A program made the translations under genes and the position numbers. The notes beneath the pieces were generated by a model. That model did no database searches, was not told the origin of the DNA, and was given only the letters and a program-made list of their open reading frames with translations. This document shows positions 1-9,778 of a DNA stretch of 10,127 bases, one piece after another. This DNA comes from Octopus sinensis. Its lineage: Eukaryota. The first letter of the stretch is position 1; every line of letters starts with the position of its first letter. The DNA is taken from contig NW_021827755.1 of NCBI RefSeq assembly GCF_006345805.1, positions 1 to 10,127 of the forward strand, given 5' to 3'.

Positions 1-522
1 AAGCCCAGTCAATGCAGCGAAAGCACCGTGACTCACCTCCTCCAAAGAAGGCAAGGGTGCAGCCCTCCGCTGATAAGGTTATGCTCACAGTCTTCTGGGA
101 CCAGGACGGAGTAGTGATGACAGATTTCCTGGCAAAGGGTACCACAATTACAGGAGCCTATTATGCTTCACTTTTGAGGATATTAAGAGAAGCTATCAAA
201 ATCAAGAGACGGGGCAAGATCAGCAAAGGCATCCTCCTCCTGCAGGACAACGCTCTGATCCACAACTCGCGTGTCACCAGATCAGAAGCACAGGCGTGCA
301 GCTATGAACTCCTCCCCTTGCACCCTCTGATTTTCACCTCTTCCCAGCCATGAAGTTGATTTTGAAAGGAAAGCGTTCCCAGATGATGCAGCCTTGATGT
401 CTGAAGTCACGTTGAGGTTGGAGGACCAAGCTGGTTTCTTCTACAAAAACGGTCTCCAGAGCCACATGAAACGATCGGAGAAATGCGTAACTCCGGGTGG
501 TTCCTGTGTAGATAAAGACTAA
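1..522 (+). pseudogene. Mariner transposase C-terminal catalytic region, frameshifted
   Basis: ORF 12-353 has KKARVQPSADKVMLTVFWD...GTTITGAYY..LL..LR.AI..KRRGK...LLLQDNA. A second frame from 317 gives LAPSDFHLFPAMKLILKGKR. A third frame, 376-522, gives FPDDAALMSEV...FFYKNGL...KCV..G..VDKD*. The HPPYSPD motif is missing. Confidence 0.92.
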
Positions 523-971: not shown

Positions 972-1413
972 CAAATCTACATTTCAAAATCAGTCTTTAA
1001 ATGCATCTGTCAGTGCAAAATTTTGTCATCTCAACAAAGTTCCATCAATTTACCATTCTGTACTACAATATGAGCAAAACAACTTTCTTTTTACACTTTG
1101 CATCTGAAAAATCTTTAATGAATTTCTCAAACTGTATATTACGGAGATGTACTTGCATAGCAAGTGACTTGATCTGAGATCGTGTGCTGGAACGAAAACA
1201 ATCGCAGCGTGGAATGTGTTTATAAGCCATTTAAGAAACACACAAAAACCATTTCTTATCTCTGCATCTTAAGTTTACTGATGCAGAAAGAACAACTTCC
1301 TCCAAGGTTGATGCTAAATTTGTCTTTCATCTGTGTTTCTACACATTCCTGGCATCCAGTTCCAAGTATTCATACCAAAGTTTACCCAAAAAACCATTTA
1401 GATCCATCACTTT

Positions 1414-1807
1414 AGGCGCAGGAGTGGCTGTGTGGTAAGTAGCTTGCTAACCAACCACATGGTTCCGGGTTCAGTCCCACTGCGTGGCATCTTGGGCAAG
1501 TGTCTTCTACTATAGCCCCAGGCCGACCAATGCCTTGTGAGTGGATTTGGTAGACTGAAACTGAAAGAAGCCTGTCGTATATATGTATATATATATATAT
1601 GTTTGTGTGTCTGTGTTTGTCCCCCTAGCATTGCTTGACAACCGATGCCGGTGTGTTTACGTACCCGTCACTTAGCAGTTCGGCAAAAGAGACCGATAGA
1701 ATAAGTACTGGGCTTACAAAGAATAAGTCCCGGGGTCGATTTGCTCGACTAAAAGGCGGTGCTCCAGCATGGCTGCAGTCAAATGACTGAAACAAGTAAA
1801 AGAGAGT
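1414..1807 (+). mobile_element. Full-length tRNA-derived SINE with CORE-like segment, copy 1
   Basis: Pol III A box TGGCTGTGTGG (1425-1435), B box GGTTCAGTCCC (1468-1478), CORE-like CTTGGGCAAGTGTCTT (1491-1506), internal TA/TG tract and AAGAG-type tail. Near-identical to 3843-4255. Possible short TSD ACTTTA (1409-1414 / 1808-1813). Confidence 0.88.
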
Positions 1808-2566: not shown

Positions 2567-2648
2567 CAGCTAGCAGGCTTCTGCTACTCTAGACTGATGA
2601 TGGGCAAAGACCCTGAAACATCCGTGTCTCTAGATGCAGGCCTAGCTG
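2567..2648 (+). ncRNA. Type I hammerhead ribozyme (predicted), canonical CUGAUGA core
   Basis: Stem I UCUAGA 2588-2593 / 2629-2634. CUGAUGA 2594-2600. Stem II GGG/CCC (2602-2604 / 2611-2613) with loop CAAAGA and a U.U at its base. GAAA 2615-2618. Stem III ACA/UGU with a UCCG loop. GUC cleavage triplet 2626-2628. Stem I extends via CUGC/GCAG and CAGCUAG/CUAGCUG. Confidence 0.8.
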
Positions 2649-2987: not shown

Positions 2988-3262
2988 GGATCTTTTCGGT
3001 TTGAACGGCAGTTTTTTCTAGCGGTGTCATATGAAATTGTCACCCATAATTATGACCCTAGTATCGATCTATTGCATTTCAATCTGTTTTGGGGTTAGGG
3101 GTGGTGGGAAGGGTATCTTTTTTTCTTCAACAAATGTAAATAAACCCAATCTGTTTCTTAAATGAGGGATATATTCATACGGCACAGAATGTTTTTGTTT
3201 TTTTACCTCAATAGACATCATTGATTGGTTGAAATTGCAGAAATTGAAGCAAAAAAAACAAT
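2988..3262. mobile_element. MITE-like element fragment (one TIR plus internal sequence) overlapping the tail of the zinc-finger ORF
   Basis: TIR-like GGATCTTTTCGGTTTGAACGGCAGTTTT (2988-3015) matches 944-971 in inverted orientation. The internal extent and the boundary near 3260 rest on recollection of a common octopus repeat and are approximate. Confidence 0.55.
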
Positions 3263-3803
3263 GCAGTAAAACAGTTTTGTCTCTTGCGTGTATTTTTTTA
3301 TGCAAACCAAGGGCTGAGCTGTGGGAGAAAGATTTCCCACACAGCCCACAATGATAAGGTCTTTCTCCAGTATGGACTCTTTTGTGAGAAACAAGATGAG
3401 CATTTTGAGTGAAAGATTTACCACAAGTATCACAGTGGAACCGTTTTTCCCCAGTGTGTGTTCGTTTATGGGTCCTTAAATTACTGTTGTCGAGAAAACT
3501 TTTTCCACAAATCTCACAATGAGAAGGTCTTTCTCCTGTATGGACTCTGATGTGTTTCACTAAATCGTTTTTAGAGAGGAATGACTTCTCGCACACTTGA
3601 CAGTGGAACGGTTTCTCTCCCGTGTGAATTCGTTTGTGTCTGGCTAAATTACTCCTAGAGACGGAAGGAATTCCACATAGGTCACAGTGGAATGGTTTCT
3701 CCCCGGTGCGACTCCGTATATGGATGACAAGACTGGATTTCCAACAGAAAGATTTCCCGCATATTTCACACTGAAACGAACTTTCTTTAGTGGGCGTTTC
3801 CAA
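3069..3803 (-). CDS. Tandem C2H2 (Kruppel-type) zinc-finger protein: probable terminal exon or young pseudogene
   Basis: Six 28-aa C-x2-C-x12-H-x3-H units with TGEKP/TGERP linkers at 3776-3288. The annotated start is TTG, not ATG. The frame is open back to a TGA near 3831-3833, and candidate TTTAG acceptors lie at 3815-3819 and 3826-3830. Finger 1 has His->Arg at its last ligand, and finger 2 lacks the conserved Phe. Confidence 0.85.
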   Translation of the reverse strand: METPTKESSFQCEICGKSFCWKSSLVIHIRSRTGEKPFHCDLCGIPSVSRSNLARHKRIHTGEKPFHCQVCEKSFLSKNDLVKHIRVHTGERPSHCEICGKSFLDNSNLRTHKRTHTGEKRFHCDTCGKSFTQNAHLVSHKRVHTGERPYHCGLCGKSFSHSSALGLHKKIHARDKTVLLHCFFCFNFCNFNQSMMSIEVKKQKHSVPYEYIPHLRNRLGLFTFVEEKKIPFPPPLTPKQIEMQ

Positions 3804-3842
3804 ATCGTATTTCTCTAAATCAACACTAAATCATACATACAT

Positions 3843-4255
3843 AGGCGCAGGAGTGGCTGTGTAGTAAGTAGCTTGCTAACCAACCACATGGTTCCGGGTT
3901 CAGTCCCACTGTGTGGCATCTTGGGCAAGTGTCTTCTGCTATAGCCCTGGGCCGACCAATGCCTTGTGAGTGGATTTGGTAGACGGAAACTGAAAGAAGC
4001 CTGTCGAATATATGTATATATATATAAGTGTGTGTGTATATGTTTGTGTGTCTGTGTTTGTCCCCCTAGCATTGCTTGACAACCGATGCTGGTGTGTTTA
4101 CGTCCTCGTCACTTAGCGGTTCGGCAAAAAAGAGACCGGTAGAATAAGTACTGGGCTTACAAAGAATAAGTCCCGGGGTCGATTTGGTCGACTAAAGGAG
4201 GTGCTCCAGCATGGCCGCAGTCAAATGACTGAAACAAGTAAAAGAGTTAAAGGGT
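3843..4255 (+). mobile_element. Full-length tRNA-derived CORE-like SINE, copy 2
   Basis: Colinear and near-identical to 1414-1807 (GGCGCAGGAGTGGCTGTG...CAAATGACTGAAACAAGTAAAAGAGT). It lies antisense to, and about 40 bp from, the 5' end of the zinc-finger ORF. Confidence 0.88.
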
Positions 4256-4395
4256 TATATTTATATATATATGTATATATATATACATACATACATATAT
4301 ATGTATATATATACATATATATATATATGTATATCTATATATACATATATATATTTATATATATATGTATTTATATATATACATACATGTATATA
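4256..4395. repeat. Compound (TA)n/(TACA)n microsatellite
   Basis: Direct reading. Confidence 0.92.
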
Positions 4396-4791
4396 CTAGC
4401 AGTATCGCCCGGCGTTGCTCGGGTTTGTAAGGGAAATAACTATATAAACATTTTTAGAGAGTTATAGCGAAAAAATAGCCAAAAAATGCATTAAAAATGG
4501 AAAAAAAATTAAGGTAAATTTCTTTTTTAAATCGTTGACACATCGTAGATATTCTTAGAGAGTTACTTCCTTATATAATAGCGAAAAAATTCATTAAAAT
4601 GGAAAAATATGATGGTAAATTTTTTTAAATCGTAGACTCATCGTAGATGCGCGCTAATACCCAGAAGGGCTCGATATGACTCACGACTTTAAGATACTCG
4701 CTTTTGGTTAAACTGCACCGCAAAATGTTGAAGTAGTTACGAATCTAAATCGTAGGAGACAGACACACAACGTCACTTTTATATATAAAGA
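4396..4791 (-). mobile_element. Non-autonomous Helitron-like element, family A, copy 1
   Basis: On the minus strand it begins A|TC (GA at 4790-4791) and ends CTAG|T (4396-4399). A GC-rich hairpin CCCGAGCAACGCCGGG (4408-4423) lies 8 nt before CTAG. There is no TSD. Sister copy at 5877-6373. Confidence 0.75.
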
Positions 4792-5194
4792 TATAAGCCA
4801 CGTAGTTATATACACATACTTTGTTATATAGACATTTTTAAAAGAAAATGTTATTTTGAACACAACATTTCTTTACCCTTTCGTTACTATATTTCTGACC
4901 AAAATACACCCCTTATGTGTTTCAATTAATTTGTAACGTAATCATAAATTTAGTCTGGTTTCATTAAACAACTATAACTTTTTTATTTATCAATATATTA
5001 ACGTGAATTTTGGAAGATAATTTAATGAAATGTTCTCAACCAATTCTATACTATAATTTTTGTCACAAAGTGACTCTAATTGCAGGTAGATACAAGTAAA
5101 TTCAACAATATATAAAATTATTAAAATTTTGTTCAAACATCACTATAGAAAATGGGTTATTAGCTAATATTCAATTGGGTATACAACAAAATTT

Positions 5195-5545
5195 TACGAT
5201 AGAATTTGTTATTCTGGGTAACTTTCTGATACCCATAATAATATTTATGGCAAAATAAGCCTTAATTTCATTTAAGGTTGTGGGAAATAACAAACTATCC
5301 TTTCTTTCGCTTTGTTTACATTCAGCGTAATGGTTCGTTTCCGCCGTGATGATTTCAAATGGGCTCATTCGAAAAAGTAAAAAGAAATAGTCTAAGGCTT
5401 TACTCTTCTGGGAAAGTCTGTGGCTTGGTTCAGTTTCTTCAGAAAAATCACCAAAAGAAACAGTTTTTAAATTTTCACTCCATTCAGGTGCCAATTCATT
5501 TTCTTTATCGCTGTCGGAGCTCTCGGATTCACTGTTTCCACTTTA
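5195..5545 (-). pseudogene. piggyBac (PGBD4-like, DDE_Tnp_1_7 type) transposase N-terminal fragment
   Basis: Acidic SGNSESESSDSDKENE followed by ...ALDYFFLLF...FEIITAETNHYAE...TTLNEIKAYFAINIIMGIRKLPR, matching the piggyBac pattern F.LFF...I..ETN.YA...T..EI.AF.G..I.MG...LP. Similarity ends before the DDD core. Confidence 0.82.
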
Positions 5546-5620: not shown

Positions 5621-5864
5621 GTGTGTGTGTGTGTGCGTGTGCTATAGCCCACAGTAAGAAAAGCACTTGACTTAGACACCACAATGTGAGTTTTCTCTAA
5701 ATTTTGCTTAATTGGGGTTGAAATTTTAAAAACTGGACCTGGCACGACCCGATGCATTCTACTCTTAAAAATGCTAGGTAAATTGTAATTGAAGAAATCC
5801 TATATTGTAGATTTCTATAAGAGACAAAGGGAGGCAGATAAAATCTGCCTTTTATAATAAGAGA
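5621..5864 (-). mobile_element. Repeat family B, copy 1 (Helitron-like 5' end)
   Basis: About 5690-5860 is near-identical to 7050-7220. The minus strand starts A|TC-TCTTATTATAAAAG, followed by a perfect 8-bp hairpin AGGCAGAT-AAA-ATCTGCCT (5832-5850). No CTAG 3' end was found, and the left boundary is approximate. Confidence 0.55.
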
Positions 5865-5876
5865 TACATATATATA

Positions 5877-6373
5877 CTAGCAGTATTGCCCGGCGTTGCT
5901 CGGGTTGTAAGGGAAATAACTATATAAGCATTTTCAGAGAGTTATAGCCAAAAAATAGCAAAAAATGCATTAAAAATTGAAAAAAAATTAAGGTAAATTT
6001 TTTTTTTAAATCGTTGACACATCGTAGATATTTTTAGAGAGGTACTTCCCTTATATAATAGCGAAAAAAATGCATTAAAATGGAAAAATATGATGGTAAA
6101 TTTTTTTTTAAATCGTTGACACATCGTAGATATTTTTAGAGAGGTACTTCCCTTATATAATAGCGAAAAAAATGCATTAAAATGGAAAAATATGATGGTA
6201 AATTTTTTTTAAATCGTAGACTCATCGTAGACGCGCGCTAATACCCAGAAGAGCTCGATATGCATCACGACTATAAGATACCCGCTTTTGGTTAAACTGC
6301 ACCGCAAAATGTGGGAGTAGTTACGAATCTAAATCGTAGGAGACAGACACACAACTTCACTCTTATATAAAGA
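5877..6373 (-). mobile_element. Non-autonomous Helitron-like element, family A, copy 2 (one extra internal ~101-bp unit)
   Basis: Same termini as 4396-4791 (CTAG 5877-5880, GA 6372-6373). An internal unit recurs at 6011, 6113 and 6214. Length is 497 bp versus 396 bp for copy 1. Confidence 0.75.
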
Positions 6374-6474: not shown

Positions 6475-6982
6475 TTTTTGTCAGAATTACAAATTTTGAA
6501 AACACAATAGGAACAAATTTCGGAAAAAAATCTCCCAAAATTCACGGAATTAAAATTACACTTCGATTTTTGTACAAAACTGTATTTGAAGTGTTTACGA
6601 AGTATAATACGTGTTTTCACGAATGTACTAAAGAGATTTACTCTGATATTCTCATTTAAATATGAATAGGTAAATTCGGGCAGTTTGGTAACGAAAGGGT
6701 TAAACGGATGCATACATTTATTAATAACTATATATAAGTGTCGTCTGTTTATACATAAACACTGTTTCATACTTTCAGTTTAGTCTTCCTCAAATCACTC
6801 TGTCGCTATTTACTCTCTTCCAAGAACATTTTCACTCACTCTATCTCTTAGCTTGCCATACATTTACTCATGTATCTATCAGCGTGATAGATAGAAACAA
6901 ATATACATCGCCATCGCATTCTATTGTCTACCTGTCAACACACACACAGTGAATTAGTTTCAGTTTATTCGTTGCACACAGT

Positions 6983-7221
6983 GTGTGTGCGTTTACGTGT
7001 GCTGTAAACCAGACTAAGAAAAAGCATTGACATACACACCAGAATGTGAGTTTTCTGTAAATTTTGCTTAATTGGAGTTTAAATTTTAAAAACTGGACCT
7101 GGCATGACCCGATGCATTCTACTCTTAAAAATGCTAGGTAAATTGTAATTGAAGAAATCCTATATTGTAGATTTCTATAAGTGACAAAGGGAGGCAGATA
7201 AAATCTGCCTTTTATAATAAG

Positions 7222-7222
<1 letters not shown>
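6983..7222 (-). mobile_element. Repeat family B, copy 2
   Basis: Matches 5621-5864, with the hairpin at 7192-7210. It ends against a TA microsatellite. The left boundary is approximate. Confidence 0.55.
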
Positions 7223-7301
<79 letters not shown>

Positions 7302-7400: not shown

Positions 7401-7567
7401 ATATTGTTATATTTTGGAATGGTCATTTTGCCAGTGTAGCCAATAAAAACACAAGCACTATATATTTGGTGTTATTTTGCTTCAGTGTTATTTATTTTTT
7501 ACATTAATCTTAATCTTAATCTTATTGGCTACACTGGCAAAATGACCATTCCGAAATATAACAGTAT
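7401..7567. repeat. 46-bp inverted repeat with a 75-bp spacer
   Basis: 7401-7446 and 7522-7567 are reverse complements at 44/46 positions. (TTAATC)x3 at 7504-7521 sits at the inner junction. Confidence 0.92.
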
Positions 7568-7704: not shown

Positions 7705-8112
7705 GCACAACAGCTTCCACAAGGGCATGTGTTACATCAAAAATTCTTGGTTGTGGATGCAAATCCTCTCATTCGCGTACGACATAATGCGGCAACAGCA
7801 TAGAATTGAAGCGTCCATCTCTTTCTTCTCTCAATGTAGAATGAGGAAATTTGGATGTTGAAGTAATGTAAATAAATAAATACATATATAGACGTGAAAA
7901 TTACTAAGTCTCTCTAAAAGAGAACACGGCAGCGTTCCCGGAAAATAATAGTTATCGCCATACTAATATGGCATTCTTATAAAAATAAGAATAAACTGAC
8001 CGCTTATTAGCTCCATGAGGCCATCGCCTTAAGTTAGCTATTTGATACACAAACTGTATCCATATAACCTTCGAACAAGGGAGGTCAGTCGGTCCACACT
8101 ACTTGACCGACA

Positions 8113-8154
8113 GCTACAGACGCGTTTCGGGGTATTGCCCCTTTTCAATGTAGC
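8113..8154 (-). ncRNA. Minimal type I hammerhead ribozyme, U3-A8 core variant, unit 1 (predicted)
   Basis: Minus strand: GCUACA-UUGAAAA-GGGG-CAAUA-CCCC-GAAA-C-GC-GUC-UGUAGC. It has a 6-bp stem I, a 4-bp stem II and a palindromic ACGCGU stem III. Predicted cut between 8119 and 8118. Confidence 0.8.
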
Positions 8155-8473
8155 ATAGCCAGACCAGTAGGTGTCGCTTCTGACAATCTCTGTTCGAAGG
8201 TTTTATTTACCTAGTTTCGGTGGAATACATCCACTTGTTTTCAATAATAGAAATATTAAAATTACTAAGTCTCTCTAAAAGAGAACACGGCAGCATTCCC
8301 GGAAAATAATAGTTATCGCCATACTAATATGGCATTCTTATAAAAATAAGAATGAACTGACCACTTATTAGCTCCATGAGGCCATCGCCTTAAGTTAGCT
8401 ATTTGATACACAAACTGTATCCATATAACCTTCGAACAAGGGAGGTCAGTCGCTCCACACTACTTGACCGACA

Positions 8474-8515
8474 GCTACAGACGCGTTTCGGGGTATTGCC
8501 CCTTTTCAATGTAGC
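8474..8515 (-). ncRNA. Minimal type I hammerhead ribozyme, U3-A8 core variant, unit 2 (predicted)
   Basis: Identical 42-nt motif, +361 from unit 1. Confidence 0.8.
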
Positions 8516-8834
8516 GTAGCCAGACCAGTAGGTGTCGCTTCTGACAATCTCTGTTCAAAGGTTTTATTTACCTAGTTTCGGTGAAATACATCCACTTGTT
8601 TTCAATAATAGAAATATTAAAATTACTAAGTCTCTCTAAAAGAGAACCCGGCAGCGTTCCCGGAAAATAATAGTTATCACCATACTAATATGGCATTCTT
8701 ATAAAAATAAGAATAAACTGACCGCTTATTAGCTCCATGAGGCCATCGCCTTAAGTTAGCTATTTGATACACAAACTGTATCCATATAACCTTCGAACAA
8801 GGGAGGTCAGTCGCTCCACACTACTTGACCGATA

Positions 8835-8876
8835 GCTACAGACGCGTTTCGGGGTATTGCCCCTTTTCAATGTAGC
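8835..8876 (-). ncRNA. Minimal type I hammerhead ribozyme, U3-A8 core variant, unit 3 (predicted)
   Basis: Identical 42-nt motif, +722 from unit 1. Confidence 0.8.
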
Positions 8877-8996
8877 GTAGCCAGACCAGTAGGTGTCGCT
8901 TCTGACAATCTCTGTTCGAAGGTTTTATTTACCTAGTTTCGGTGGAATACATCCACTTGTTTTCAATAATAGAAATATTAAAATGACTAAGTCTCT

Positions 8997-9054
8997 ATGT
9001 ATATATGTATATATGTATATATGTATATATATATATGTATATATAATTATTATG

Positions 9055-9088
<34 letters not shown>

Positions 9089-9112
9089 ATACATATATAT
9101 ATATACATATAT

Positions 9113-9169
<57 letters not shown>

Positions 9170-9177
9170 GTATATAT

Positions 9178-9209
<32 letters not shown>

Positions 9210-9210
9210 G
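8997..9210. repeat. Long (TA)n/(TATG)n microsatellite
   Basis: Direct reading; about 210 bp. Confidence 0.93.
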
Positions 9211-9211
9211 T

Positions 9212-9668
9212 GAGCTCTTACCTCTGCTGGTGACTAAAGGCCTCTCGCTCAGAGTAAAAGGCAGACTGTATGATGCGTGTGTACGAACAGCCATGCTACA
9301 TGGCAGTGAAACATGGGCCGTGACTGCTGAGGACATGCGTAAGCTCGTGAGGAATGAAGCCAGTATGCTCTGATGGATGTGTAATGTCAGTGTACATACT
9401 CGACAGAGCGTTAGCACCTTGAGAGAAATGTTGTACCTAAGAAGCATCAGTTGTGGTGTGCAAGAGAGACGATTGCGCTGGTATGGTCATGTGGCGAGAA
9501 TGGATGAAGATAGTGTGTGAGAGAAAGTGCCAATCCCTAGCAGTTGAGGGAACCCGTGGAAGAGGTAGACCCAGGAAAACCTGGGACGAGGTGGTGAAGC
9601 ACGACCTTCGAACTTTAGGCCTCACTGAGGAAATGACCAGCGACCGAGACCTTTGGAATATTCTGTAA
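9212..9668 (+). pseudogene. RTE-clade retrotransposon ORF C-terminal region (post-RT), disrupted
   Basis: KGRLYDACVRTAMLHGSETW...EASML*WMCNV...RRLRWYGHVARM, then after a frameshift near 9513 LAVEGTRGRGRPRKTWDEVVKHDL. LRW.GHV.RM and RGRPR.TW are RTE hallmarks. In-frame TGA at 9371-9373. Confidence 0.9.
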
Positions 9669-9778
9669 GTGAGAAGACCAGGCAGGACAAGTGAGCCCAG
9701 CCCACTTATGAATGCCTTTCCTCCCTTGGACACAAAGACCTGTGAGGCAAGCGAAGTCGATATAGAACCTCATCCGAC

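What the first reader, a model, noticed from the sequence alone, without database searches (positions are those of the whole stretch)
7897..8996. Ribozyme-bearing 361-bp tandem array: candidate octopus non-LTR retrozyme / circular-RNA element
Seen: three ~98% identical 361-bp units plus 17 bp, with no coding capacity, each carrying the same minus-strand hammerhead. A transcript would be cut at 8841/8840, 8480/8479 and 8119/8118, releasing two exact 361-nt monomers. The array ends are permuted relative to the cut site. Established: metazoan non-LTR retrozymes and Penelope-like element (PLE) terminal repeats are tandem repeats of a few hundred nt with minimal type I hammerheads, and retrozymes produce circular RNAs. 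Inference: this is such an element, possibly inserted as a multimer by rolling reverse transcription of a circular RNA using a PLE or other retroelement RT in trans. I do not know of a description of this family in cephalopods, but I cannot search.
Basis: partly seen in the sequence, partly recalled or inferred. Interest (0 to 1): 0.92.

Follow-up and report, generated by a model that had tools for sequence, protein, structure and literature searches.

The report
Hammerhead-ribozyme tandem repeat (animal retrozyme)
A three-copy 361-bp non-coding repeat in an animal genome carries a self-cleaving hammerhead ribozyme motif in each copy. It fits the known class of animal "retrozymes" (small mobile elements that spread through circular RNAs), so it is a new example of a known kind, not a new kind.

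Summary
Window 7897-8996 is 3 x 361 bp plus 17 bp, 97.8-98.6% identical, with no indels and no ORF over 54 codons. Each unit carries the same 42-nt minus-strand type I hammerhead: GCUACA-UUGAAAA-GGGG(CAAUA)CCCC-GAAA-CGCG-UC^UGUAGC. The cuts fall at 8119/8118, 8480/8479 and 8841/8840.

- **Not chance:** a published-style descriptor gave 1 hit in 3000 whole-window shuffles.
- **Core:** it differs from consensus only by U3/A8 replacing the C3-G8 pair, a covariation already reported in Schistosoma Penelope-like elements.
- **Helix III:** it is 1 bp plus a palindromic CGCG loop. Cofolding predicts a double hammerhead.
- **Circular monomer:** the 361-nt circle is predicted to be unusually well paired (z = -5.2).

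Unit size, GC (40%), lack of coding, single-polarity ribozyme and position beside a (TA)n tract all match non-LTR retrozymes (mussel 350-390 bp).

Not shown:
- cleavage;
- circular RNA;
- other genomic copies;
- a Penelope partner;
- an octopus origin.

Rfam gives no hammerhead hit here, but a canonical control also falls far below threshold.

Verdict: new member of a known kind, of moderate interest.

The parts
7897..8996 (-). Whole tandem array, 3 x 361 bp plus a 17-bp stub. Units are 7897-8257, 8258-8618 and 8619-8979; the stub is 8980-8996. The ribozyme-sense (RNA-sense) strand is minus.
   Evidence: TRF; unit comparison; no similarity to the rest of the window.
8113..8154 (-). Hammerhead copy 1. 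Helix I 5' strand 8154-8149, core UUGAAAA 8148-8142, helix II hairpin 8141-8129, GAAA 8128-8125, CGCG loop 8124-8121, U16.1 8120, C17 8119, helix I 3' strand 8118-8113. Predicted cut 8119/8118.
   Evidence: The MFE fold recovers helices I and II.
8474..8515 (-). Hammerhead copy 2, identical in sequence. Predicted cut 8480/8479.
8835..8876 (-). Hammerhead copy 3, identical in sequence. Predicted cut 8841/8840.
8480..8840 (-). Predicted released 361-nt monomer. The second monomer is 8119-8479. As a circle it folds at -108.9 kcal/mol, z = -5.2 against shuffles.
8788..8840 (-). 5' arm of a 43-bp imperfect closing stem. Its first 6 bp are hammerhead helix I. It pairs with 8510-8563.
   Evidence: Circular MFE pair table.
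8510..8563 (-). 3' arm of the same closing stem. It ends in the helix I 5' strand, GCUACA.
8997..9211 (.). (TA/TG)n microsatellite directly abutting the array, the candidate integration target. The left flank ends in ...ACATATATAGACGTG.
   Evidence: TRF; sequence. A (TA)n insertion bias of PLEs is reported in PMC8557442.

Best explanation
The array is a non-LTR retrozyme-type element: a non-coding, non-autonomous retroelement whose minus-strand transcript carries one type I hammerhead per 361-nt unit.

**Shown (in the sequence or by prediction):**
- The motif has all hammerhead core positions. The one exception is that the C3-G8 tertiary pair is replaced by the isosteric U3-A8.
- Helix I is 6 bp and continues, after a small internal loop, into a 43-bp stem.
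- Helix II is 4 bp with a G10.1-C11.1 pair.
- Helix III is a single A15.1-U16.1 pair closed by the palindromic loop CGCG. It is predicted to be unstable within one ribozyme and stable as a 6-bp ACGCGU/ACGCGU duplex between two ribozymes.

**Inferred:**
1. A multimeric minus-strand transcript folds neighbouring ribozymes into double hammerheads.
2. It cuts after GUC.
3. This releases 361-nt monomers with 5'-OH and 2',3'-cyclic phosphate ends.
4. A tRNA-ligase (RtcB-type) enzyme circularises them.
5. A Penelope-like RT/GIY-YIG enzyme supplied in trans copies the circle more than once round.
6. The multimeric cDNA is inserted into a (TA)n tract. This would give an array whose ends are permuted relative to the cut site and that carries a 17-bp overhang of a fourth unit.
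For: **The motif is real.**
- Array geometry and identity are confirmed.
- There is no coding capacity.
- The motif is present three times, identical each time.
- The descriptor gives 1 hit in 3000 whole-window shuffles and 0 in 20000 unit shuffles.
- The MFE of the isolated motif recovers helices I and II.

**Dimer-dependent cleavage is plausible.**
- Cofolding two 54-nt copies gives the double hammerhead with an intermolecular helix III: -38.7 kcal/mol against 2 x -16.3.
- The intramolecular A(CGCG)U hairpin scores +5.3 kcal/mol and the duplex -8.9.

**The monomer looks like a retrozyme RNA.**
- Circular monomer z = -5.2. Most non-microsatellite control segments scored between +1.4 and -2.5, and the lowest reached -3.6.
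- Unit GC is 40.4% and CpG is not depleted.
- There is no ribozyme on the plus strand.

**Links to Penelope-like elements.**
- The one metagenome match, L001, has a canonical C3/G8 hammerhead with the same helix II stem and the same GAAACGCGUC, but a fully different and still complementary helix I.
- That hammerhead lies downstream, on the same strand, of a decayed RT ORF and a remnant I read by eye as GIY-YIG-like, which is the PLE layout.

**Literature.**
- Non-LTR retrozymes are 150-450-bp, low-GC tandem repeats with type I hammerheads. They give well-paired circRNAs of about 170-400 nt.
- Mussel units are 350-390 bp.
- Amphibian ones have a 1-bp helix III with a palindromic tetraloop and cleave as dimers (PMC7229834).
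- U3-A8 occurs naturally in about 1300 Schistosoma PLE-type motifs (PMC4209133).
- Retrozymes are related to PLE pLTRs (bioRxiv 10.64898/2026.07.22.740005).
Against: - No Rfam hammerhead model matches, even at E<=10 on a 91-nt stretch. The canonical L001 control also reaches only 23.9 bits against a gathering score of 52, so this negative result is weak.
- Two of the eleven strictly conserved core positions deviate. Activity of a U3/A8 core in this sequence context is untested.
- No other copy of the family could be found: protein-space six-frame searches, viral contigs and prokaryotic genomes all gave nothing. None of these collections holds animal genomes, so mobility and conservation of the core are unshown.
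- The three units are too alike to show selection. There are 0 of 10 variable sites inside the ribozyme, but only 1.2 are expected.
- No PLE RT/EN is present in the window.
- No clear target-site duplication is visible.
- (TA)n tracts cover roughly 5% of this window by my estimate from the TRF and repeat tables, so the adjacency is only modest evidence.
Confidence: 0.72

Rival explanations
1. Dead relic. The array descends from a retrozyme or PLE repeat, but the U3/A8 core combined with the 1-bp helix III no longer cleaves. The locus would then be an inert minisatellite.
For: - There is no Rfam match.
- PLE-type hammerheads cleave poorly in vitro even as dimers (PMC4209133; PMC6765202).
- There are only three units, and no expression data.
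Against: - The two changes are exactly the pair that restores the 3-8 interaction.
- Every other core base, G10.1-C11.1, all 10 helix I and II pairs and the palindromic loop are intact. Random decay would rarely give this pattern.
- Units differ from their consensus by only about 0.9%, and CpG is not depleted, so the array is young.
Confidence: 0.15
2. Fragment of an autonomous Penelope-like element. The array would be tandem pLTR copies left after loss of the RT/EN body, not a separate non-autonomous family.
For: - PLE pLTRs carry hammerheads and PLEs form partial tandems with short 'tails' (PMC8557442).
- L001 shows the same ribozyme architecture downstream of a PLE-type RT.
- A 2026 preprint derives retrozymes from pLTRs.
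Against: - There is no RT or GIY-YIG coding remnant in or next to the array.
- There are three complete head-to-tail units with no internal body.
- The unit has no similarity to anything else in the window.
- The two readings overlap heavily in any case.
Confidence: 0.08
3. Ordinary minisatellite in which a hammerhead-like string arose by chance.
For: - The motif deviates from the strict consensus and is missed by Rfam.
- The descriptor was relaxed to admit U3/A8.
Against: - The expected number of descriptor hits is about 0.0003 per 10-kb window on both strands, and 0 in 20000 unit shuffles.
- The motif sits at the end of a 43-bp stem, as in retrozyme RNAs.
Confidence: 0.03
4. Integrated cDNA of an exogenous viroid-like or deltavirus-like circular RNA replicon.
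For: - The array is a multimer of a small, well-paired unit with a ribozyme in each unit.
Against: - There is a ribozyme in one polarity only.
- There is no ORF.
- 361 nt with 40% GC fits retrozymes (PMC7229834).
Confidence: 0.02

Closest known systems
Mussel (Mytilus galloprovincialis) non-LTR retrozymes (Cervera & de la Pena 2020, PMC7229834)
   Same: A mollusc element. Tandem non-coding repeats of 350-390 bp with one type I hammerhead per unit, low GC and well-paired monomers. The window's unit is 361 bp with 40% GC.
   Different: No sequence comparison was possible. The mussel ribozymes are described with a normal core. Here the core is U3/A8 and helix III is only 1 bp. Expression as circRNA is shown for mussel and not here.
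Amphibian retrozymes / newt satellite 2, axolotl HHR_Amex1 (PMC7229834)
   Same: Helix III is a single base pair capped by a palindromic tetraloop. Monomers cleave weakly and dimers cleave efficiently. Units are about 330-350 nt. The predicted double hammerhead here is the same solution.
   Different: A vertebrate host, a canonical C3/G8 core, and up to about 10^5 copies. Copy number here is unknown.
Schistosoma mansoni PLE (Cercyon) min-hammerheads with U3-A8 (Cervera & de la Pena 2014, PMC4209133)
   Same: The same natural covariation, U3-A8 in place of C3-G8.
   Different: Those are 'minimal' motifs: helix II of 7-8 bp with a bulged base, helix I of 4-5 bp and almost no helix III. They occur mostly as single copies in pLTRs. 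Here helix I is 6 bp, helix II is 4 bp, and the motif sits in a short tandem non-coding array.
Penelope-like element pLTR hammerhead (example fetched here: L001, WNGL01048539.1)
   Same: Identical GGGG...CCCC helix II stem, identical GAAACGCGUC, and a 6-bp helix I.
   Different: L001 has C3/G8 and a different loop 2 and helix I. It has a single copy, about 700 nt downstream of a decayed RT ORF with a possible endonuclease remnant. There is no similarity outside the ribozyme.
Plant LTR retrozymes (PMC4918200)
   Same: Non-autonomous, hammerhead-processed, with a circRNA intermediate.
   Different: They have type III hammerheads, LTRs, PBS/PPT, 4-bp TSDs, GC above 55%, 600-1000-nt circles and Ty3-gypsy helpers. 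None of these applies here.

Membership tests
Hammerhead ribozyme, type I | Strict conserved core: C3 U4 G5 A6 N7 G8 A9 ... G12 A13 A14, A15.1-U16.1, H17 | tested here: not met
   All core positions match except U3 and A8 (UUGAAAA, GAAA, A-U, C17). All three copies are identical.
Hammerhead ribozyme, type I | The position 3-8 pairing is kept, either as C-G or by covariation | tested here: met
   U3-A8 is present. It is reported as a natural covariation in PMC4209133. That the 3-8 pair forms in the active structure is from my own knowledge of the full-length hammerhead structures.
Hammerhead ribozyme, type I | Three helices around the core, open at helix I, with G10.1-C11.1 | tested here: met
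   Helix I is 6 bp and helix II is 4 bp starting G-C. Helix III is 1 bp plus CGCG within one ribozyme, or 6 bp between two.
Hammerhead ribozyme, type I | Reaches the gathering score of an Rfam hammerhead model | tested here: not met
   There is no hammerhead hit even at E<=10. The canonical control in L001 scores only 23.9 bits against 52. The models do not cover this short-helix-III class.
Hammerhead ribozyme, type I | Site-specific self-cleavage in Mg2+ | not testable with these tools
   This needs in vitro transcription of monomer and dimer constructs.
Non-LTR retrozyme (Cervera & de la Pena 2020) | Head-to-tail repeats of about 150-450 bp with one same-strand type I hammerhead per unit | tested here: met
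   There are 3.05 units of 361 bp, each with a hammerhead on the minus strand.
Non-LTR retrozyme (Cervera & de la Pena 2020) | Non-coding, GC below 50% | tested here: met
   The longest open frame is 54 codons. GC is 40.4%.
Non-LTR retrozyme (Cervera & de la Pena 2020) | No LTR, PBS or PPT | not tested
   No separate long terminal repeats flank the array in the repeat table. No PBS or PPT search was run.
Non-LTR retrozyme (Cervera & de la Pena 2020) | The monomer RNA is highly self-paired | tested here: met
   By prediction only: circular MFE -108.9 kcal/mol, z = -5.2, 64% of bases paired.
Non-LTR retrozyme (Cervera & de la Pena 2020) | Dispersed multi-copy family in the genome (evidence of mobility; TSDs when present) | not testable with these tools
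   No animal genome collection is on hand. Indirect searches found nothing. No clear TSD is visible at 7896/7897 or 8996/8997.
Non-LTR retrozyme (Cervera & de la Pena 2020) | Expressed as linear and circular monomer RNA | not testable with these tools
   No transcriptome data are on hand.
Penelope-like element (pLTR) | The hammerhead-bearing repeats flank an RT plus GIY-YIG ORF | tested here: not met
   There is no such ORF in the window. The neighbouring coding remnants are a mariner transposase, a C2H2 zinc-finger exon, a piggyBac-like fragment and a stretch at about 9212-9700 that I read by eye as a LINE 3' fragment.
Viroid-like / deltavirus-like circular RNA replicon | Self-cleaving ribozymes in both polarities (or a delta-antigen ORF) | tested here: not met
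   There is a ribozyme on the minus strand only and no ORF.

The most novel reading that the evidence does not exclude
This is an active cephalopod retrozyme family. Its canonical-architecture type I hammerhead works with a naturally covaried U3-A8 core and cleaves only as a double hammerhead. It would yield abundant 361-nt circular RNAs in cephalopod tissues, mobilised by the Penelope-like elements reported as recently active in Octopus vulgaris (PMC13282606). That would be the first retrozyme described in cephalopods. It would also be a natural test case for the 3-8 pair in a full-length hammerhead.
Probability: 0.3. Interest if true: 0.5.

Novelty: new member of a known kind. Interest (0 to 1): 0.38.

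Why it matters
If confirmed, it extends hammerhead retrozymes to another mollusc lineage, possibly cephalopods. I found no paper describing them there.

It also offers a natural U3-A8 core inside a canonical type I scaffold. That is a convenient substrate for asking how much the C3-G8 pair identity matters, and whether dimer-only cleavage controls the balance between multimers and circles.

It does not change the picture of what retrozymes are. Standard repeat annotation and Rfam would both miss it, so such elements are probably under-counted.

Tried and rejected
**Rfam.**
- Gathering threshold on the whole window, and E<=10 on 1.4 kb and on 91 nt: no hammerhead hit. The only hits were low-complexity miRNA models on the (TA)n tract.
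- Control: Rfam barely sees the canonical L001 hammerhead either.

**Looking for family copies.**
- Exact or degenerate pattern scans of viral contigs and prokaryotic genomes: 0 hits.
- The metagenome scan gave one unrelated-family hammerhead, L001.
- Protein-space trick, translating the 54-codon frame and then all six frames of the array: no homologue.
- Literature full-text search for strings of the unit: nothing relevant.

**Provenance.**
- The zinc-finger ORF is not on record.
- Mariner fragment homologues are ENA metagenome contigs, crustaceans, spiders and others. The best one comes from an unnamed ENA assembly. Octopus is therefore neither confirmed nor excluded.

**Other checks.**
- tRNA-like head: ARAGORN finds none. 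The B-box-like GTTCGAAGGT also occurs elsewhere in the window, so a pol III promoter is not claimed.
- Selection within the array: 0 of 10 variable sites lie in the ribozyme, but only 1.2 are expected, so this is uninformative.
- Lunse et al. 2017 (PMC5785218) is not held.

Full report
**Observation.** Tandem Repeats Finder reports one array at 7897-8996 with period 361, 3.0 copies, 97% matches and no indels. Cutting it into units gives 7, 5 and 8 differences per 361 between pairs. There are ten variable sites, all singletons. A 17-bp start of a fourth unit (8980-8996) follows, with one mismatch. The longest start-to-stop ORF lying inside the units is 38 aa and the longest stop-free frame is 54 codons. 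The unit has no similarity to the rest of the window.

**The motif.** On the minus strand each unit reads GCUACA UUGAAAA GGGG-CAAUA-CCCC GAAA CGCG U C ^ UGUAGC. The 30-nt core string occurs exactly three times and never in 200 shuffles. In standard numbering:
- Helix I is 6 Watson-Crick pairs.
- U4 G5 A6 A7 A9, G12 A13 A14, A15.1-U16.1 and C17 are all consensus.
- Helix II is 4 G-C pairs beginning G10.1-C11.1.
- The triplet before the cut is GUC.
- The only departures are U3 and A8 in place of C3 and G8.

The cuts fall at 8119/8118, 8480/8479 and 8841/8840.

**Chance.** I wrote an RNAmotif-like descriptor following the published type I and minimal descriptors. It requires:
- helix I of at least 5 bp;
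- a core of CUGANGA, or UUGANAA for the U3/A8 variant;
- an optional bulge;
- helix II of at least 3 bp with a 3-10-nt loop;
- GAAA, then 0-8 nt, then U and H.

It finds the three copies plus one unrelated site. It gave 0 hits in 20000 dinucleotide shuffles of the unit and 1 hit in 3000 shuffles of the whole window on both strands. The motif is not a chance string.

**Rfam.** No hammerhead model matches, at gathering score or at E<=10, even on a 91-nt stretch. As a control, the canonical C3/G8 hammerhead found in L001 reaches only 23.9 bits against Hammerhead_HH9, whose gathering score is 52. The Rfam models therefore do not cover hammerheads with a 1-bp helix III. The negative result is weak evidence against.

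**Structure.**
- The isolated motif folds into helices I and II at minimum free energy. Helix I continues, after a 3x1 internal loop, into further pairs.
- This is the canonical metazoan type I layout (helix I 6 bp, helix II 4 bp, helix III 1-2 bp with a small palindromic loop; PMC4209133). It is not the 'minimal' PLE layout.
- The intramolecular helix III hairpin A(CGCG)U costs +5.3 kcal/mol, whereas ACGCGU pairs with itself at -8.9 kcal/mol.
- Cofolding two 54-nt copies gives the double hammerhead as the minimum: -38.7 kcal/mol against -32.6 for two monomers.
- This is the arrangement shown experimentally for newt and axolotl repeats, which cleave well only as dimers (PMC7229834; PMC6765202).
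- The 361-nt monomer folded as a circle has MFE -108.9 kcal/mol, z = -5.2. The plus strand gives z = -4.8.
- Most control segments of the window scored between +1.4 and -2.5. One reached -3.6, and the two that cover (TA)n tracts scored about -6.2 and -6.4.
- A 43-bp imperfect stem (8840-8788 with 8563-8510) extends helix I. No ribozyme is found on the plus strand.

**Context.**
- The array abuts a 215-bp (TA/TG)n tract on its right (8997-9211). That tract is followed by a 5'-truncated stretch that I read by eye as a LINE 3' fragment; Pfam gave no RT hit there. The left flank ends ...ACATATATAGACGTG.
- PLEs are reported to prefer (TA)n targets and to leave short terminal extensions (PMC8557442).
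- (TA)n tracts make up roughly 5% of this window by my estimate from the repeat tables, so the adjacency is only modest support.
- No target-site duplication is evident, and no PLE RT/EN is present in the window.
- The neighbours are a mariner transposase fragment, a C2H2 zinc-finger exon, a piggyBac-like fragment and SINE-like repeats.

**Age.**
- Units differ from their consensus by about 0.9%.
- The CpG count is 16 against 14.6 expected.
- Five of the ten differences are CpG to CpA.
- With only three units every variable site is a singleton, so the pattern cannot separate insertion as a multimer from very rapid local amplification.

**Relatives.**
- No animal genome collection is available. 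Pattern scans of viral and prokaryotic collections found nothing. Searching protein space with translated frames found nothing.
- The single metagenome scan returned L001 (WNGL01048539.1). It carries ACGCAG CUGAAGA GGGG-CGAAA-CCCC GAAACGCGUC ^ CUGCGU.
- L001 has the same architecture with the canonical C3/G8 and an entirely different but still complementary helix I.
- Its hammerhead lies about 700 nt downstream, on the same strand, of a truncated RT ORF (RVT_1, E = 1.4e-6, just under Pfam's cut-off). Past the stop codon there is a YIGxT-containing remnant that I read as a decayed GIY-YIG domain.
- The KPTDT...HFSSFHP stretch in that ORF is, from my memory, typical of PLE RTs. I did not test this.
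- L001 therefore links this hammerhead architecture to PLEs, but it is one example and shares nothing with the unit outside the ribozyme.

**Comparison with what is known.**
- Non-LTR retrozymes are defined as low-GC, non-coding tandem repeats of 150-450 bp with type I hammerheads. They are expressed as well-paired circRNAs of about 170-400 nt. In mussel the repeats are 350-390 bp (PMC7229834).
- A 2026 preprint relates them to PLE pLTRs.
- The U3-A8 covariation was reported in about 1300 Schistosoma PLE-type motifs (PMC4209133).
- Every in-silico criterion of the class is met here. Copy number, expression and cleavage cannot be tested.
- I found no paper describing retrozymes or hammerheads in cephalopods. 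A 2026 repeat annotation of Octopus vulgaris lists recently active PLEs but no ribozyme elements.
- The octopus origin of the window could not be verified.

**Verdict.**
- This is most likely a young non-LTR retrozyme array with a dimer-dependent, U3-A8 hammerhead (confidence 0.72).
- The main rival is that it is an inactive relic of such an element.
- It is a new member of a known kind.

Noticed in passing
window 2588-2634 (+), predicted cut 2628/2629: A second, unrelated hammerhead-like motif with a canonical core: UCUAGA CUGAUGA U GGG-CAAAGA-CCC(U) GAAA CA-UCCG-UG UC^UCUAGA. Helix III is 3 bp with a tetraloop. Helix II is imperfect (a G.U at 10.1-11.1, or an extra U). A distal 7-bp stem, CAGCUAG/CUAGCUG, closes the region. 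It is a single copy, antisense to and downstream of the zinc-finger exon. It was found by the descriptor and folded (z = -2.3). Rfam does not match it. It suggests that hammerhead-bearing retroelements are common in this genome.
   Followed up: partly
L001 (WNGL01048539.1) 4-1017, about 1020-1120, and 1734-1775: A metagenome contig of an AT-rich eukaryote carrying a decayed Penelope-like element. It has an RT ORF, a stop codon, a YIGxT-containing remnant that may be GIY-YIG-derived, and about 600 nt further on a canonical hammerhead with the same helix II stem and GAAACGCGUC as the window's. A 214-bp two-copy tandem repeat lies at 2397-2832.
   Followed up: partly
window 7897-8979: Six of the ten differences between units are G-to-A on the plus strand, which is C-to-U on the ribozyme-sense strand. 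Five of these are at CpG. Only one is the reverse type. With so few sites the strand bias is not significant (about p = 0.1), but it would be worth checking on more copies.
   Followed up: partly
window 8067-8076 (-), 8192-8201 (+) and their repeats; also 9604-9613 (-): GTTCGAAGGT, which resembles a pol III B box, sits in both arms of the long stem of the unit. An AGUAGUGUGG stretch lies about 30 nt upstream on the minus strand. ARAGORN finds no tRNA-like structure. No promoter is claimed.
   Followed up: partly
window 7411-7446 and 7524-7560: A pair of inverted repeats of about 35 bp (TATATTTTGGAATGGTCATTTTGCCAGTGTAGCCAATAA / its complement), about 80 bp apart and next to a TA-rich tract. It looks like a small MITE.
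   Followed up: no
window 12-353 (+), 3069-3803 (-), 5171-5494 (-), about 9212-9700 (+): Coding remnants around the array. These are a mariner Transposase_1 fragment (E = 1e-20), a six-finger C2H2 zinc-finger exon and a piggyBac-like DDE_Tnp_1_7 fragment (E = 3.5e-7). There is also a 5'-truncated stretch that I read by eye as a LINE 3' end; it has no Pfam RT hit.
   Followed up: partly
window 1413-1804 / 3842-4246; 633-828 / 2006-2201; 4370-4785 / 5851-6369; 5621-5876 / 6981-7236; 5960-6231: Several families of interspersed repeats, 90-97% identical and SINE-like, often adjoining (TA)n tracts. There is also a 102-bp tandem repeat of 2.6 copies.
   Followed up: no
Rfam hammerhead models versus L001 1722-1792: A clearly canonical type I hammerhead with a 1-bp helix III scores only 23.9 bits against the best Rfam hammerhead model (gathering score 52). 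Standard Rfam annotation will therefore systematically miss this class.
   Followed up: yes
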